The notes: a model not told the origin generated them from the letters alone. Numbered from the stretch's first letter, positions 5,198 to 63,475 are shown. The stretch: DNA of 64,000 nucleotides from Heteronotia binoei (GCF_032191835.1 NC_083223.1:248620001-248684000); one strand, 5' to 3'. Translations and numbers: made by a program.

Positions 5198-5406
5198 TAG
5201 GCTTGCTAACCTCCAGGTAGAGCCTGGAGAGCTCCTGGAATTACAAATGATCGCCAGACCACAGTGACCAGTTTCCCTGGAGAGAATGGCTGTTATGGAG
5301 GATAGCAGTATAGCTGGCTCAGGTCTCTCTCCTCCCCAAACTCTCCCCTTCCCAGTCTCCACCCCCAAGTCTCCAGGACTTTCCCAACCCAGAGTTGGCA
5401 ACCCTA
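5198..5406. mobile_element. hAT MITE of the TAGGGTTGCCA-TIR family
   Basis: taggcttgctaac ... gttggcaacccta ends; TSD-like cctgtggt / cttgtggt. Family members at about 4690-4910, 6350-6605, 13000-13250, 56169-56570, 58489-58671 and 62832-63035. Confidence 0.8.
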
Positions 5407-56000: not shown

Positions 56001-57438
56001 GCTTACATCATTCTTCTCTATTTTATCCTCACAGCAACCTTGTGAGTTAGGATAGACAGAGTGTGTGAGTCACCCAAGGTCCTTCGCAAGCTTCCATGGT
56101 CAATTGAGGATCTGAACCTGCTTCTCCCAGATCCGAATCTTACTCTAATATGCCATGATGGTAAATGCTAGGGCTGCCAATTCCCCACTGGGCCAGGGGG
56201 GTCCCCCACTCCCACCCCCGCTGGGGCATCCCCCTGCTCCTGCCTCCCACTCAGATAGGCAGCAGGAAAAAAATTTTCTTTTTTAAAGGCAGCCTTGCAC
56301 ATATGGTGCTGCATCATTGCAGTAAAAACCTGGAAGTGATACGGAGTAGCAATACAACTCACTGGGAACTCAACAGTTTTATCCTGGAGATGTAGGGGTG
56401 AATCCTAGGGAGCGTAGAATTTGGGGATGTGAGAGACCTTACTGGAACATCATGCCACAGTATCCACCTTCCGAAGCAATCAGATTCTCCATGGGACCTG
56501 ATCTCTATAGACTGGAGATCAGTTGTAATTCTGGTAGGTCTCCAGGCCCCACCTGGAGGTTGGAAACTTTGGAGCAAGTCTTCAAGTGGATTCACTTGCA
56601 GCTTAAAGAGACAAAAGAAGGTGGAGGAGTGTGTGTATACAGAAAATGTCTTTATTGTGTCCACCAAATGAAGTTTCTTTTAAATAATATTCAGTTGAAA
56701 CAAGGACAATAGACAGATGGGGTTAATCTGCATCAGCTTCAAGGGCTAAACAGTTCAGTGACCTTACTATAAATGCTTTGTGCATCTATGCTGTGCTCCA
56801 AGTGTATACAAAAATTTCAAATATCCTATTCCCAATTTCCCTTCCTTTGAGGATAATGTGCTGACTGCAGACTGTATATTGATGTTTTCATAAACCACTA
56901 GCCTGTACATCTCTTGCTCCTTTGAATGATGGTTCAGAACAATAAGGTATTCACAGAGAACACTCTACAGACAAGACTCTTTATGATGTCATTTCTTATC
57001 TCCATTCAGAACCTAATAATCCTGCAGAGGAAGCTGTACCCTCCCATCAAAACAACCAGGCTAATAATTAAACCCCTGAGGATGAAGCAGTGGAAGACAC
57101 TCTCCAGACCTCAAGAGCCAGCCTGTTTGTATCTGAGGAAATGTGTGTGCCTGCTTGAGTGCTCATGCTACTGAGATCAAAGGTTTGCTCCATTTGTTAA
57201 TTTTACTATTCTGTCATTGTACCATTTTACATTCTAAACCACTGCCTACCAGATAATTTTACTTCACTGTCATTGGTTCTTAATAATAATAATAGTACTT
57301 TTTATATCCCGCCCTCCCCGCCGAAGCAGGCTCAGGGCGGCTCACAACATATTAGTTCAATACAATACAGTAAAATCATATAATTCAATAAATACTACAT
57401 TATAAAACCATCATTTAAATCAACATTCCAATTAAAAT

Positions 57439-58671
57439 TAGGCTTCCCAACCCTCCCGCCCTGGCAGGGGACCCCCGTTTTTCCAGCCTCTTCCCCCGCT
57501 CCCCCCAAAAATGGAAGCGGGGGAGGGGGCGAAACGGCGCCAAGGAGCGGGCGACGCCGCTGCGCAGCTGCCGCCTCTTCTCCGTAGCTGCTCCTCCGAG
57601 ATGGGCTCAGCCTGAGGAGCAGCTACAGAGAAGCGTGGCGAGCCCCGAATCTGGGTCCTTCTAGGACCCCGAGCAGCAATGCTGGAGAAGCAAGGGGGGC
57701 GCACTTTGCTTCTCCACCTGGGCCCTCTGCTGGGCCTATGGCTGCGCGGGCGGCAAGGGGCATGCTGGGTCGGCCTCGCGGAGGGAAGCTTGTCGTGCGC
57801 CTCGGCCTGGAAGTGGGAGTCGTCGGCCAAGAGGGTGGAGGTGGCGGCGTAGGACAGCGGCGAGCCCAGGCAGGCACTCTGGCGGAGGGCTTCGCAGGGC
57901 GCGGTGCGCTTGCAGCGCCGCTCTGCCGCGTAGCTCCCGTTGGCCGCCCCCGCCGCGCCCCGCACCAGCCCCCCGGCCCAAGCAGCAGCAGCCGCCACCA
58001 GCCCCCCATCCCGCCCGCCTAGCAGGGAAAAGTGGTGCGTACGTAAAGTTGGGCAGAGGTGCGCCTCGCCTCTCCCTCGCTTCCTTTGTTGCCGAGCCCG
58101 GCAGGCAAGCAGGCAGGGGGCGAAGGAAGGAGGGAGCGCGCCTTGGCCCGGAGCCCCAGAAAGTTGCTCGGGCCGGAGGAGGAGCCCGCCCGGGAATCGC
58201 CCTCTCCAAAAAACACCCCCACCTTCTCCAAGCCACGGGCCCAGGGGACAGGAGCGCGCCCCAGGAGGGGGGGAAAGCGCGCGCCTCACTCAGCCCCAAC
58301 AGCTTAAGGAAGGGAGGGAAGGCGAAAGGAGAGAGGGGCCAGCGCGGGGAAAGGGGTGAGCCCCACCCCTCTCCCCGAGGCATGCAAGCGATCCGACCCT
58401 CTTTCTCTGCCTCTCTCTCTCTCTCTCTCCTGCGCAGGAATGTTTGAGAGGGAGAGGACCCGATCCGGAGTTGCAGTTGCAGCTAGAGTAGGGTTGCCAA
58501 CCCCCAGGTGGGGGCAGGGGATCCCCCGGTTTGGAGGCCCTCCCCCCCTTCAGGGTCGTCACAGCCTTGACCTTGGCTCCACCCCTAATGTCTCCTGGCT
58601 CCACCCCCAAAGTCTCCTGGCTCCACCCCCAAAGTTCCCAGATATTTCTTGAATTCGACTTGGCAACCCTA
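57439..58671. mobile_element. Non-autonomous hAT element carrying captured host sequence (Pack-TIR-like)
   Basis: Left TIR taggcttcccaac, right TIR cttggcaacccta. Identical 8-bp TSD attaaaat at 57431-57438 and 58672-58679. Very GC/CpG-rich interior with no transposase. Confidence 0.9.
57786..58009 (-). pseudogene. SMO: Captured fragment of Smoothened exon 1 (signal peptide and start of the CRD), frameshifted and truncated
   Basis: MGGWWRLLL, then a 2-nt remnant, then [65 protein letters not shown]. Compare human SMO as recalled: [44 protein letters not shown]. Homology stops before the exon 1 donor, and I saw no other SMO exon in the window. Confidence 0.9.
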
Positions 58672-59899
58672 ATTAAAATTAATAGTTATGGTGCTAAGTT
58701 ACAAGTTTTTAATAGATTGATGGTGAAATACAACAGCAGCGAATCTATCATTAGCTCAGCATTCAGCGAAGGCCATCTTAAAGAGAGTAGTCTTGCAGGC
58801 CCTGCGGAATTGCTCAAGACTCCGTAGGGCCTGCACTTCATCCGGCAATTGATTCCACAGGTGTGGAGCTGCGATAGAGAAGGCCCATTCCCTTGTGTTC
58901 TTCAATTTGGCCCCCCTCGGCCCAGGGATATTCAGCTGGTTCTTTCCCCTTGACCTCAGTGCTCTCTGGGGTTAATATGGGGAGAGAAGGTCCCTCAGGT
59001 AGGCAGGCCCTCGACCATATAGGGCTTTAAAGGTAATAACCAGCACTTTGTACCGAACCCGGTATGCAACCGGCAGCCAGTGCAGCCCGCGCAGCCCCGG
59101 CCATATGCGCTCCCACTTTGGGAGCCCTAACAACAGTCTAGCCGCTGCGTTCTGCACCAGCTGCAGCTTCTGGGTTCAGCACAAAGGCAGCCCCATGTAG
59201 AGGGCATTACAGTAATCCAGTCTTGAGGTGACCGTTGCATGGATCACTGTTGCTAGATCCTGGCGCTCGAGGAAGGGGGCCAACTGCCTCGCCCGTCTAA
59301 GATGAAAAAATGCGGACTTGGCAGTGGCTGCTATCTGGGCCTCCATTGACAATGAAGGCTCCAGTAGAACCCCCAAGCTCTTGACCCGGTGTGCCACTTC
59401 CAGTGACACACCGTCAAAAACTGGGAGAGGAATTTCTCTTCCCAGAGCGCCACAACCCAAGCAATCCATCTTCGTTGGATTCAGTTTCAACCCACTCAGC
59501 CTGAGCCAACCTGCCATGGCTTGCAGCGCCAGGTCCAGCTTTTTTGGGACGCAGTCAGGCCGGCCATCCATTAGTAGATAGAGCTGGGTGTCATCCGCAT
59601 ATTGATGACACCCCAGCCCATACCTCCGGGCAATCTGGGCAAGGGGGCGCATGTAGATATTAAATAACATTGGAGAGAGAACTGCTCCCTGCGGCACCCC
59701 ATAATCTAGTGAGTGCCTCTGGGACAGCTCTCCCCCAATTGCCACCCTTTGTCCCCGTCCATCAAGGAAGGAGGAAAGCCACTGTAAGGCCAACCCCCTA
59801 ATCCCTGCATCTTAAATCTGTACCATGTTGCATTCTGGGCCACTGCCTACCAGCTGTGTACGGCTCTGCTCAGCTATGTATGGCTTTGCTCGCTGTGCT

Positions 59900-60659: not shown

Positions 60660-62039
60660 ATATTGAACAGCGTTCCTCTAACTTCAACTCTCAAAGAAGT
60701 ATCTTGGCACTCTGAGACATAGGCCTGAAGTAAAGATGCTCTTGGCAACTAATCCTCTAAATCCCAGATCTAGGTGGCAACATCAAGGGAAGGCCTTGGC
60801 CCCTGTGCCCTGATATAGGCTGGCTGTCAGAGGAATTGGTTGGCCATTGTGTGAGACAGGATGCTGGACTAGATGGACACTAGTCTGGTCACTGCTCTCA
60901 ATGCATTCATGAGCGACATGACTAAACATTAGTCAATTGCTCCAAAGAAGTCTAGTGACTACTGGAGCACCAATTGGTGCTTGCAACAGCCACCCATTAG
61001 GGTTACCAGATGTACGACCTCCTTTTTTTGTGCCCATCCTCTTTTGGGCTGTTCTTAAATAACTGATGAAAATGTCTTCTTTGGGGGCTGGAAGGTTAAG
61101 AATATTCCTAGTTAGTAGCAATTATCACAGCTTAAATAGTAGGGGTATTTAAAATGAGATTTGTCATAGTCAAGAAATGTGTTCTCTTTTTTGCTTTTCA
61201 AAATATAGTAACCCTAGCCGCTGCCCAATTGACTAGTTGTTGTTAGCCTTGTTTCTATGAAACTTGTCACCCGCAAGCTATGAAACTTGGCACCTACAAG
61301 CTACATATCCAAATGTTATCATCATATCAGTGGATTCATATATTGCAAAAGTTAGAATTGTTAAGCAGGATAGGCAGGGGGAGAAAGATGGCGCTTTCAG
61401 AAGAACTGCATTTCTAAGAGCACACTGCAGCTTATCAGAAAAGAGTTTAAAAACTAACTCAACCCCACTTTGGAAGTGGGGCACAAGTGGATTTGCGTGG
61501 AAAGGTTCTAAACTGTCTGTTAGCAACTGGCCGCCAAACATGGTTGTGTCTGAAATGGCACCCAAAAACCCCCAGTAGCCACTGGCAGCCCAGACAGTTG
61601 ACAAATGCAGTGTGAATGGGCCCCAAGCATCTGGAGCTGATCTGCTCTGCTAGTAAAACTTTGAGCCACATTCAGCCTGGCCAGTGATGTCTCAGCTCAG
61701 CTCTCCAAGTGAAGCTGATTTCTGTAGTCTGGAGACGCGTTGTGATTCCAGGAGACCCCCCAACAAGCCTGTGAGGTAGGTCAGGCTGAGATTGTCTGAC
61801 AAGGTCATCCAAAGAGCTTTCATGCCAGAGCCGAGATTTGAACCTGAGCCTCGGGTCCTTGTCTGATGCTGCACCAGGCTGCCTGCCTACGGTGAACAAA
61901 AAAAGGGAACTTCCATATATTTCGGCAGAATCCCTCTGAATATCAACGCTGGGAGGGCAGCATCAAAGGCAGGTGTTTGCCTGTCCGCCCTGATGGTTGG
62001 CCCTGCAGGGCAACTTGTTGGCGGGGGTGAAAGAAGAGG

Positions 62040-62800
62040 ATGATGGCAGGGCAGCTTGGGGACTGGGATGGGCGTGTGCTTCTTCCAACTTCTCCGGGCT
62101 TCCCGCGCCCTGCCAGGGCGGCGAGCGAGGCAAAAGCCAAAGCCCTGCCAGAATCCAGATGTGAGGCTGGGGGCCCTTCCAGCGCCGGCGCTTGGCAGCA
62201 GCTGGCTCCCCGGCCGGTCCCCCCGCTGGCGCGCACCAGTGGCCCACGTGTGCGCCGCCCGGGCTGCATTGCGGCTCCAGCTGCTGCCCCGAGCAACCGA
62301 GGGAAGCGATGCAGAGGCAAAGCAGGTGAGAGAGGAGGAGGAGGGGGGGGGGGGGTGAGGCGGCTCCAGGCAAGCGGACGGGCGGGGGTTGCCCTTCCCA
62401 GCTGACGACGGTCCCCTGCCCCGGGAAGGGGTGCGGCTCTGTCCCGAGAAAGGAGAGGGAGGGGGCACCGTCTAGGACAAGGGAGCACCATCTCGAGCGG
62501 TGGTGCAGCGGAGGGAGGGCTCCCTGTGTCTGGCCGGACTGGCTGGAGTGGCGAAGACCGGTGAATGGGGGGTTGAGGGGGGGGTCCTACCAGCCCTCCA
62601 TGCCCCCTCCCTACTGTTGTATGCCGGTGCTCTTCCTGAGGATCTGCGCGCCCCCTTCGGCTCTTCTTGTGGCGTGTCCACGCGAGGGATTCCCCGAGTT
62701 AGAAACAAGAAGTCCCTGATGAAAGCCAAATGAATCGCGGGGGCGGGGGGTGGGGGGGAGAAGAAGAAAAACCGCGCTCCTGGGTTTCCCTGGCTCCCAT
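62040..62800 (+). promoter_or_regulatory. CpG-island-like promoter and probable first exon of an unidentified gene
   Basis: High GC and CpG content with no TIRs or TSD found. E-box cacgtg near 62245. Donor aagcag|gtgaga near 62325. Confidence 0.5.
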
Positions 62801-63475
62801 TGCTCGTCCTCCTCCAAGTCCTGGTCCACGGCTAGGGTTGCCAGCTCCAGGTTGGGAAATTCCTGGAGATTTGGGGGCGGAACATGGGGAGGACAGGGAC
62901 CTCAGTGGGGCACAACAACGCCGCAGAGTACGCCCTCCGAAGCATCCATGTTCTCCAGGGGGACCAGTTTGTGTAGTCTGGAGAGGCGTTGTCGTTCCTG
63001 GAGATCCCCAGGCCCCACCTGGAAGTTGGTATCCTCACCCGCCCCTGCCCCAGTCTGTCCTTCAAGGAGGGACGGCTTTCCCTTTAGTCCCGACTTCCAA
63101 ACAGCCCACAAATCCTGTCCTGGCTCTGTTAACTGGTTTCTCTTATGATTTGGAATCCTATTTTATGCCAGCTTCGCTTTGAAACACCCTTTGTTTTTAA
63201 TCAAAACCTAATGAAGGGACACATCTATATACAAGCAGAAGTGGGCTCTGATTCACAGAGGGATATGCTGTAGTGAATTGTATGCAATTGGGTTAAAGAA
63301 TAGAAAGTGACACTGGGAAGAATAATAGAAAAGTATGGAAGGCAGTTAGAGTGCTCTCCTAATAATAACAACAACTGTCTGCAGTTGAGTCACAGCTGAC
63401 TCAGTGCAACTCCAGGGCCATGGAGTTTTCAAACCCAGAGATGAGCAAAGGTTTGCCATAGCCTTTATCTGCATA

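What the first reader, a model, noticed from the sequence alone, without database searches (positions are those of the whole stretch)
57439..58671. Pack-hAT: a DNA transposon carrying the 5' end of Smoothened
Seen: TIRs and a perfect 8-bp TSD (attaaaat) bound 1233 bp with no transposase. Inside, on the minus strand, are about 480 bp of GC-rich leader, an ATG with a hydrophobic signal-like peptide, an NGS sequon and the first three CRD cysteines in a segment highly similar to SMO, ending just before the exon 1 donor. Established: Pack-MULE/Pack-TIR elements preferentially capture GC-rich 5' gene ends, and SMO is the single Hedgehog transducer. Inference: this hAT family duplicated and mobilised the SMO CpG-island/exon 1 region. 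It could supply a portable promoter, or sense/antisense RNA acting on SMO. I know of no description of this element.
Basis: partly seen in the sequence, partly recalled or inferred. Interest (0 to 1): 0.9.

Follow-up and report, generated by a model that had tools for sequence, protein, structure and literature searches.

The report
Transposon carrying Smoothened's first exon
This 1.2-kb stretch is a decayed copy of a small cut-and-paste transposon that picked up the promoter region and first exon of the Hedgehog-pathway gene Smoothened and spread it to seven places in the genome; such multi-copy gene-carrying transposons are known but rare in vertebrates, and this copy shows no sign of being used.

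Summary
Window 57439-58671 is a 1233-bp element with no transposase, imperfect 12-bp terminal inverted repeats and a perfect 8-bp target-site duplication (attaaaat).

- **Vehicle:** its two arms belong to a non-autonomous family with thousands of copies, nearly all flanked by their own 8-bp duplications.
- **Cargo:** its middle (57780-58487, minus sense) matches only the true Smoothened (SMO) 5' region on another chromosome. That locus has no transposon arms and continues into the remaining SMO exons.
- **Copies:** a whole-genome search finds eight loci carrying SMO-derived DNA. These are the real gene, six full elements and one deletion derivative, each of the seven elements with a different 8-bp duplication.
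- **History:** trees from the cargo and from the arms each group the seven elements together, so there was one capture followed by repeated transposition.
- **State of this copy:** it is dead. There is a frameshift between the ATG and the cysteine-rich part, and two deletions shared with its closest sister, one of which removes the splice donor. Two other copies keep an open ATG-to-donor exon.
- **Expression:** no RNA reads fall on the window copy's cargo.
- **Limits:** the hAT assignment rests on duplication length and repeat sequence only; no matching transposase was found.

This is a new member of a known kind (animal Pack-TIR, Tan et al. 2021), unusual for its copy number. Other unchecked notes from this scan list similar candidates with other genes in this genome.

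The parts
57431..57438 (.). Left copy of the 8-bp target-site duplication (attaaaat)
   Evidence: identical to 58672-58679 and directly abutting the element ends.
57439..57779 (+). Left arm of the vehicle transposon, including the left inverted repeat TAGGCTTCCCAA at 57439-57450
   Evidence: 4141 first-look candidates in the genome, with scored copies 86-96% identical; ordinary copies share this arm and carry their own 8-bp duplications. CpG o/e is 0.63.
57780..57785 (-). Remnant of SMO intron 1 (ccctcc). It lies next to junction B with the vehicle and next to the 22-bp deletion that removed the end of exon 1 and the GT donor.
   Evidence: other copies and true SMO read ...ctggtccG|GTAAGGccccctccg here. 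The window copy and L002 share the deletion.
57786..58009 (-). SMO exon 1 remnant. The ATG is at 58009-58007 and opens the signal peptide, followed by the NGS sequon and the first three CRD cysteines. A net +2 nt frameshift separates the ATG from the NGS sequon.
   Evidence: frames. (all PDB hits are Smoothened, E 4.9e-12). (alignment to true SMO exon 1).
58010..58487 (-). SMO upstream and 5'UTR-derived GC-rich leader. A 54-bp deletion near 58022, shared with L002, removes an upstream ATG.
   Evidence: homology to the true SMO locus (L007) runs from window 57780 to 58482 and stops where the arms begin. One search shows the alignment. CpG o/e for the whole cargo is 0.70, against 0.23 for the window.
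58488..58671 (+). Right arm of the vehicle. It is a 184-bp MITE-like unit with its own inverted repeats (TAGGGTTGCCAAC ... TTGGCAACCCTA) and three 22-bp tandem repeats. The element's right inverted repeat is at 58660-58671.
   Evidence: present at 84-97% identity in every sampled vehicle copy; the repeat motif occurs 3 times in the window against 0.05 expected.
58672..58679 (.). Right copy of the 8-bp target-site duplication (attaaaat)

Best explanation
Window 57439-58671 is one of seven dispersed copies of a Pack-TIR element: a non-autonomous, hAT-like cut-and-paste transposon whose internal segment was replaced once by about 810 bp of the host Smoothened locus. The captured piece runs from about 480 bp upstream of the ATG, through the whole of exon 1 (signal peptide and first third of the CRD) and its GT donor, to about 15 nt into intron 1.

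The likely mechanism is as follows. During repair of a break or excision gap in a vehicle copy, DNA synthesis switched template to the SMO CpG island and back at short shared sequences. Both transposon ends stayed intact. A transposase supplied in trans then moved the chimera repeatedly, making a new 8-bp duplication at each insertion.

Shown here: the structure, the parental locus, a single origin, and repeated transposition. Inferred: the template-switch mechanism and the hAT identity of the transposase.

The window copy is an inert relic. It is frameshifted, lacks the donor, shows CpG loss, and has no detectable RNA.
For: - **Exact boundaries.** Six other copies align to the window element from 57439 to 58671 and no further.
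- **Independent insertions.** Each copy has its own perfect 8-bp duplication: attaaaat, aatttgtc, tttatgtc, ctgcataa, actaagag, ggaagggt, ttgctgtc.
- **Vehicle family.** The arms belong to a family with 4141 first-look candidates. All 26 sampled ordinary copies share one internal sequence that differs from the SMO cargo. Counting the window copy, 22 of the 27 elements tabulated there have perfect 8-bp duplications; adding the six other SMO-carrying copies gives 28 of 33.
- **Parental locus.** The true SMO locus matches only window 57780-58482 and has no arms. It lies on the same strand upstream of the Fz-CRD exon 2 (C8:127428714-875) and the split 7TM exons (C8:127398987-127417771). Ten other Frizzled loci are accounted for separately.
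- **Complete inventory.** A search with cargo only gave 9 candidates and 8 matches: the real gene, six full copies and one deletion derivative.
- **Single origin.** In the cargo tree SMO is sister to all six full copies, and the window copy pairs with L002 at 96/97 support. In the arms-only tree all seven carriers form one clade at 95/93, nested among the vehicles with the long left arm. The window copy and L002 also share two deletions.
- **Divergence.** K2P distance is 0.048-0.079 between copies and 0.087-0.110 between copies and SMO.
- **Junctions.** Two nt are shared at one junction and 5-6 nt (cctccg) at the other.
- **Literature.** Animal Pack-TIRs, mostly hAT, are described, and the multicopy ones are GC-rich (PMC8277862).
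Against: - No autonomous element with these inverted repeats was found. Thirty hAT-transposase loci sampled from at least 2623 candidates lack them.
- The hAT target preference nTnnnnAn is only weakly visible: T at position 2 in 12 of 28 (p=0.05) and A at position 7 in 12 of 28 (p=0.04).
- Junction B carries 2 extra nucleotides, so the microhomology reading is not clean.
- No orthologous empty site could be examined, because no related genome is available.
Confidence: 0.9

Rival explanations
1. The element does something. It could act as a portable CpG-island promoter or first exon producing chimeric transcripts, or as a source of sense or antisense RNA that acts on SMO.
For: - The cargo and left arm still look like a CpG island (GC 0.69, CpG o/e 0.70 against 0.23 for the window).
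- Two sister copies (C1:162.15M and C4:15.8M) keep an open frame from the ATG through the signal peptide to the GT donor.
- Tan et al. report that an appreciable share of animal Pack-TIRs are transcribed, often as chimeras.
Against: - There were zero reads on 57791-58432 in three raw RNA-seq runs, each with about 1 Gb sampled, at 97% identity or more. Only the repeat arms were covered, by reads that continue into unlike sequence.
- An index search with cargo only found just a 0.09 word share in one metatranscriptome.
- The window copy is frameshifted and lacks the donor.
- CpG counts fell from 77 in SMO to 53-65 in the copies. CpG sites account for over half of the divergence between copies, as expected for methylated, unconstrained DNA.
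- The RNA negative is weak: only about 6% of each run was read and the tissues are unknown.
Confidence: 0.05
2. The carrier is a real Pack-type TIR transposon but belongs to a superfamily other than hAT that also makes duplications of about 8 bp, such as P, Merlin or a MULE.
For: No transposase could be linked to these inverted repeats. The nTnnnnAn preference is marginal.
Against: - The duplication is exactly 8 bp in 28 of 33 elements checked, with near-matches in the other five.
- The inverted repeats are short, 12 bp, and begin TAGGG, which fits the hAT YARNG rule (my own knowledge of hAT ends).
- hAT transposase domains are extremely abundant in this genome: at least 2623 candidates, many in open frames of about 940 aa.
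- hAT accounts for 208 of 370 animal Pack-TIRs.
Confidence: 0.1
3. It is the genuine SMO first exon or a functional SMO paralogue, and the transposon-like ends are coincidental. Alternatively, it is a segmental duplication or an assembly artefact.
For: The peptide matches SMO only and the region is a CpG-rich block.
Against: - No Fz or Frizzled exons lie near C1:248.6 Mb. The nearest on that chromosome are about 4 Mb away and belong to a different Frizzled gene.
- The complete SMO gene is on C8.
- The window copy is frameshifted and has no donor.
- Homology between copies stops exactly at the inverted repeats, and each copy has a different duplication and different flanks. That rules out segmental duplication and makes a seven-fold assembly artefact implausible.
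Confidence: 0.01

Closest known systems
Animal Pack-TIRs, in particular the multicopy Pack-hAT-N8_XT of Xenopus tropicalis, which carries the CAPSL 5'UTR (Tan et al. 2021, PMC8277862)
   Same: Both are non-autonomous hAT-type vehicles with an internal segment replaced by a GC-rich 5' gene fragment. In both, the parental gene is on another chromosome, the copies have distinct target-site duplications showing transposition after capture, and there is short shared sequence at the breakpoints.
   Different: - Seven copies here, against three in the frog example. Only 4 multicopy cases were found in 100 animal genomes.
- The cargo is about 810 bp, against a median of 224 bp.
- The cargo is a whole first exon with ATG, signal peptide and splice donor plus upstream CpG island, not only UTR.
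Plant Pack-MULEs and Pack-TYPE elements (rice, Arabidopsis Pack-CACTA; PMC5861414, PMC8903248, PMC6379663)
   Same: The logic is the same: non-autonomous TIR elements acquire GC-rich 5' ends of genes and amplify them. Most copies become pseudo-exons.
   Different: The superfamily differs (hAT-like with an 8-bp duplication, not Mutator or CACTA), the host is a vertebrate, and the cargo here is a single fragment rather than a mosaic of several genes.
Ssk-FB4 of Drosophila melanogaster (Tan et al. 2021)
   Same: A host gene's 5' region and coding sequence were captured by a TIR element and amplified by transposition to distant loci.
   Different: Ssk-FB4 carries a nearly complete gene, is polymorphic and very young, and has protein-level support. 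The SMO element carries only exon 1, its copies differ by about 5-8%, and no expression was seen.

Membership tests
Pack-TIR (non-autonomous TIR transposon carrying a host gene fragment) | Both termini, including the inverted repeats, are shared with a cargo-free transposon family | tested here: met
   The arms 57439-57779 and 58488-58671 match thousands of ordinary copies, and ordinary copies have a different, shared interior.
Pack-TIR (non-autonomous TIR transposon carrying a host gene fragment) | A target-site duplication flanks the chimeric element | tested here: met
   a perfect 8-bp duplication at all seven SMO-carrying copies, each one different.
Pack-TIR (non-autonomous TIR transposon carrying a host gene fragment) | The internal segment is homologous to an identifiable parental gene copy that lacks the transposon ends | tested here: met
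   C8:127446163-912 matches only the cargo; that locus continues into SMO exon 2 and the 7TM exons.
Pack-TIR (non-autonomous TIR transposon carrying a host gene fragment) | No transposase is encoded | tested here: met
   The element is 1233 bp, and none of its five ORFs of 110 aa or more has a Pfam match.
Pack-TIR (non-autonomous TIR transposon carrying a host gene fragment) | Multicopy class: mobilised after capture, from a single origin | tested here: met
   The cargo tree and the arms tree (carriers monophyletic at 95/93) agree. The window copy and L002 share deletions.
hAT superfamily | 8-bp target-site duplication | tested here: met
   28 of 33 elements have a perfect 8-bp duplication, and the other five are near-matches (four with one mismatch, one off by one base in register).
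hAT superfamily | Short terminal inverted repeats beginning YARNG | tested here: met
   The right and inner repeats read TAGGGTTGCCAA. The left reads TAGGG or TAGGC depending on subfamily. The consensus rule comes from my own knowledge.
hAT superfamily | Target preference nTnnnnAn | tested here: inconclusive
   T at position 2 in 12 of 28 (p=0.05) and A at position 7 in 12 of 28 (p=0.04).
hAT superfamily | An autonomous partner with the same inverted repeats that encodes a hAT transposase | tested here: inconclusive
   hAT dimerisation domains are abundant, but none of 30 sampled loci carries these repeats or resembles the arms. Wider sampling was blocked.
Functional Smoothened gene | Exon 1 is in frame with a donor and is followed in cis by the CRD and 7TM exons | tested here: not met
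   Searches show the frameshift and the deleted donor. Searches show no Fz or Frizzled exons near the window.

The most novel reading that the evidence does not exclude
This genome hosts a recently, perhaps still, active hAT-like vehicle family that works as a vertebrate counterpart of rice Pack-MULEs. On this reading it repeatedly picks up CpG-island first exons, and the SMO cassette copies that keep ATG, signal peptide and splice donor (C1:162.15M, C4:15.8M) serve as portable promoter and first-exon modules that give chimeric transcripts or ectopic SMO-like regulation.

Three things hint at this:

- Some ordinary vehicle copies have very short terminal branches, under 1%.
- Thousands of hAT transposase copies sit in long open frames.
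- Several unchecked scan notes describe other Pack-hAT candidates in this genome.
Probability: 0.1. Interest if true: 0.8.

Novelty: new member of a known kind. Interest (0 to 1): 0.55.

Why it matters
Transposons that duplicate gene fragments drive exon shuffling and the birth of new promoters in plants. In animals, a survey of 100 genomes found only four multicopy cases (PMC8277862).

This element is a clean, fully traceable vertebrate example. The parental gene, the vehicle family, both capture junctions, a single origin and seven independent insertions are all visible in one genome. The cargo is a complete 'start module' of a key developmental receptor: CpG island, ATG, signal peptide and splice donor.

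That makes it a good natural test case for three questions: how capture happens, how fast captured CpG islands decay, and whether such cassettes ever get used. It also warns annotators that SMO-like first exons at these seven loci are not genes.

Tried and rejected
- **Paralogous empty site.** The repeat sequence flanking the window insertion also occurs in L003, but the AT-rich stretch around the insertion point aligns too poorly (60% identity overall) to serve as an empty site. I also left both duplication copies in that construct by mistake. It is not used as evidence.
- **Autonomous partner.** Thirty hAT-transposase loci were scanned by regular expression and BLAST for the inverted repeats, the arms and the full vehicle sequence, with no hits.
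- **Is the ordinary vehicle interior also a captured gene?** Its six-frame translations are low-complexity, GC-rich and unconvincing. Not pursued.
- **Literature search for the inverted-repeat sequence.** Only unrelated papers came back.
- **Pfam on the SMO peptide.** No Fz hit, as expected because exon 1 holds only the first part of the CRD. One sub-threshold spurious match (LINC-PINT) was ignored. The PDB sequence search settled the identity.
- **Expression.** A second run search with cargo only found no real RNA holder.
- **ORFs in the neighbouring CpG island (61.9-62.5 kb).** They look non-coding and have no Pfam match.

Full report
**What is in the sequence**

The element runs from 57439 to 58671 (1233 bp). 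It is flanked by attaaaat at 57431-57438 and again at 58672-58679. It begins TAGGCTTCCCAA and ends TTGGCAACCCTA, which makes a 12-bp inverted repeat with 10 of 12 positions complementary. GC content rises from about 0.40 in the flanks to 0.63-0.73 inside. None of its five ORFs of 110 aa or more matches a Pfam family, so it encodes no transposase.

On the minus strand, an ATG at 58009-58007 opens [10 protein letters not shown]. A different frame reads ...[53 protein letters not shown]. A sequence search of the PDB with that peptide returns only Smoothened chains: 14 of 14, best E 4.9e-12, aligned to the start of the cysteine-rich domain (CRD). In this copy the start codon and the CRD segment are in different frames.

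**It is a family, and the real gene is elsewhere**

A search of the window's own genome with 57700-58480 found seven full-length matches at 79-100% identity. It also found dozens of short hits to the first 79 bases only.

BLAST of the element plus flanks against these loci shows two things:

- Five other loci align from 57439 to 58671 and stop there. These are C6:61.52M, C4:130.89M, C1:162.15M, C2:27.82M and C4:15.82M.
- C8:127446155-912 aligns only to 57780-58482. It matches the interior and has no arms.

An eighth locus (C5:65.04M) is a 704-bp internal-deletion derivative that keeps both ends of the cargo.

A second search with cargo only returned 9 candidates and 8 matches, so the inventory is complete at this sensitivity. 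It comprises the real gene, six full copies and one derivative.

The C8 locus is the true SMO gene. On the same strand and downstream of it lie an Fz-CRD exon at C8:127428714-875 and four Frizzled-7TM exons at C8:127398987-127417771. The other ten Frizzled-family loci in the genome are single- or few-exon FZD genes elsewhere. Nothing Fz- or Frizzled-like lies near the window.

**Every copy is an independent insertion**

Each of the seven SMO-carrying elements has the same termini and its own perfect 8-bp duplication:

| Copy | Location | Duplication |
|---|---|---|
| L001 | window | attaaaat |
| L002 | C6:61.52M | aatttgtc |
| L003 | C4:130.89M | tttatgtc |
| L004 | C1:162.15M | ctgcataa |
| L005 | C2:27.82M | actaagag |
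| L006 | C4:15.82M | ggaagggt |
| L008 | C5:65.04M | ttgctgtc |

The flanks are unrelated. This rules out segmental duplication and makes an assembly artefact implausible.

**The vehicle**

The left arm (57439-57779) alone gives 4141 first-look candidates in the genome. I sampled 26 ordinary copies, 720-1454 bp long. They carry the same two arms, and most have perfect 8-bp duplications. Counting all 33 elements checked, including the seven SMO carriers, 28 have perfect duplications and the other five are near-matches.

The ordinary copies share one GC-rich interior in a series of deletion forms. Only the SMO carriers differ.

The right arm (58488-58671) is itself a 184-bp MITE-like unit. It has perfect inverted repeats (TAGGGTTGCCAA) and three 22-bp tandem repeats.

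In a tree built from the arms only, all seven SMO carriers form one clade (95/93). That clade is nested among the vehicles with the long left arm. Some 940-bp vehicles have terminal branches below 1%, so the family was active recently.

**What was captured and how**

The alignment of all copies with the true locus shows the ancestral cargo, about 810 bp in total:

- about 480 bp upstream of the SMO ATG;
- the whole of exon 1, which in the true gene reads [26 protein letters not shown]...AHDKLLLWSG;
- the donor G|GTAAGG;
- about 15 nt of intron 1.

The cargo sits exactly between the inner repeat of the right-arm unit and position 340 of the left arm, and it replaces the ordinary interior.

At one junction the vehicle and SMO share 2 nt. 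At the other they share cctccg, with two extra nucleotides in the product. This pattern fits template switching during gap or break repair, as proposed for animal Pack-TIRs (PMC8277862). It does not prove it, and this step is inference.

The parental locus has no vehicle copy within 1.5 kb.

**History**

In the cargo tree SMO is sister to all six full copies. The window copy pairs with L002 at 96/97 support. That pairing agrees with two deletions they share:

- a 54-bp deletion upstream of the ATG;
- a 22-bp deletion that removes the end of exon 1 and the donor.

The already-deleted element therefore transposed again.

| Comparison | K2P, all sites | K2P, non-CpG sites |
|---|---|---|
| Between copies | 0.048-0.079 | 0.019-0.034 |
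| Copies against SMO | 0.087-0.110 | 0.058-0.078 |

(Both.) With squamate neutral rates of roughly 1-2e-9 per site per year (my own knowledge, uncertain), the burst is on the order of ten to a few tens of million years old.

**State of the copies**

| Copy | State of exon 1 |
|---|---|
| Window | net +2 nt frameshift between the ATG and NGS; donor deleted |
| L002 | further deletion inside the exon; donor deleted |
| L003 | +8 nt frameshift |
| L005 | -1 nt frameshift; donor mutated |
| L004, L006 | open frame from the ATG to the GT donor, with small in-frame deletions |

CpG observed/expected is 0.75 in true SMO, 0.60-0.70 in the copies and 0.23 across the window. CpG counts fell from 77 to 53-65, and CpG sites carry more than half of the divergence between copies. 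The remaining CpG richness is therefore best explained by youth, not by protection from methylation. This is inference.

**Expression**

Three raw RNA-seq runs were laid on 56400-59600 at 97% identity or more. About 1 Gb of each was read, roughly 6% of each run. They gave zero reads across 57791-58432. Coverage was confined to repeat parts, from reads that continue into unlike sequence and so come from other repeat copies.

A cargo-only run search found only a 0.09 word share in one metatranscriptome.

There is therefore no support for the promoter or RNA ideas. The negative is weak, because tissues are unknown and sampling was shallow.

**Superfamily**

Three observations point to hAT:

- the exact 8-bp duplications;
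- short inverted repeats beginning TAGGG;
- a marginal nTnnnnAn tendency (T at position 2 in 12 of 28, A at position 7 in 12 of 28).

hAT transposase domains are also very abundant here, with at least 2623 candidates, many in open frames of about 940 aa.

None of 30 sampled transposase loci carries these repeats. Wider sampling was blocked. I therefore rate hAT as likely, about 0.85, but not demonstrated.

**Surroundings**

The insertion lies between a SINE-like repeat (about 57300-57350) and a LINE reverse-transcriptase fragment (59176-59793, minus strand; PF00078, E 3.5e-15). It is about 3.4 kb from a single-copy CpG island at 62.0-62.8 kb that has no recognisable coding match.

**Comparison with what is known**

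Tan et al. 2021 (PMC8277862) found 370 Pack-TIRs in 100 animal genomes, 208 of them hAT. Only four were multicopy (three in Xenopus tropicalis, one in alligator). The median cargo was 224 bp, and the multicopy cases tended to be GC-rich.

The SMO element meets every defining feature of a multicopy Pack-TIR. It is a new member of that kind rather than something new in kind.

It stands out in three ways:

- It has seven copies.
- Its cargo is about 810 bp.
- Its cargo is a complete promoter-proximal first-exon module of the only Smoothened gene.

I found no description of it.

Other first-stage notes from this scan list further Pack-hAT candidates in this genome, with SLC22A31-like, PTGES3L-like, TERT/RAB26, LONRF and NOTUM pieces. 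I did not test these. If they hold, the genome-wide phenomenon would be more interesting than this single element.

Noticed in passing
window 58488-58671, and loci L023, L030, L036, L040: The right arm is a self-contained 184-bp unit with perfect 12-bp inverted repeats and three 22-bp tandem repeats. Elements of about 490-560 bp with the same two ends occur near other vehicle copies. This unit drew by far the highest RNA-seq depth in the region, from reads that run on into other sequence, so many copies sit inside transcripts.
   Followed up: partly
genome-wide, e.g. G000:C10:48526048-48526281, C1:35329283-35329516: At least 2623 candidate hAT transposase dimerisation domains were found, many inside open frames of about 940 aa without stops. 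This suggests one or more hAT families that are intact and possibly still active.
   Followed up: partly
loci L026-L040 (ordinary 915-950-bp vehicle copies): Some ordinary vehicle copies have terminal branch lengths of 0-1% in the arms tree. They are much younger than the SMO-carrying copies, so the family was mobilised very recently.
   Followed up: no
L004 (G000:C1:162.15M) and L006 (G000:C4:15.82M): Two sister copies keep an uninterrupted SMO exon 1 reading frame from the ATG through the signal peptide and three cysteines to an intact GT donor, with small in-frame deletions. They could act as first exons if transcribed.
   Followed up: partly
window 62000-62800: This is a single-copy CpG island (GC up to 0.72) about 3.4 kb from the element. 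Its ORFs are low-complexity and have no Pfam match. It may be the promoter or first exon of an unidentified host gene or a non-coding RNA. A SINE-like repeat sits at about 62830-63035.
   Followed up: partly
window 59176-59793 (minus strand): This is a LINE reverse-transcriptase fragment (PF00078, E 3.5e-15) directly downstream of the insertion. The flanking 58778-59069 repeat also occurs next to the C4:130.89M copy.
   Followed up: no
window 5392-5406 (minus strand): There is another occurrence of the family's terminal motif (TAGGGTTGCCAACTC) elsewhere in the window. It is probably another MITE copy, but neither arm matches there in a BLAST of the window.
   Followed up: no
L007 / G000:C8:127446.2-127446.9k: The true SMO leader contains an upstream ATG (ctggcgATGgcgagg) about 70 nt before the main ATG. 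It is out of frame with the main ATG and closed by a stop, so it is a possible uORF. It is retained in four Pack copies and deleted in the window copy and L002.
   Followed up: no
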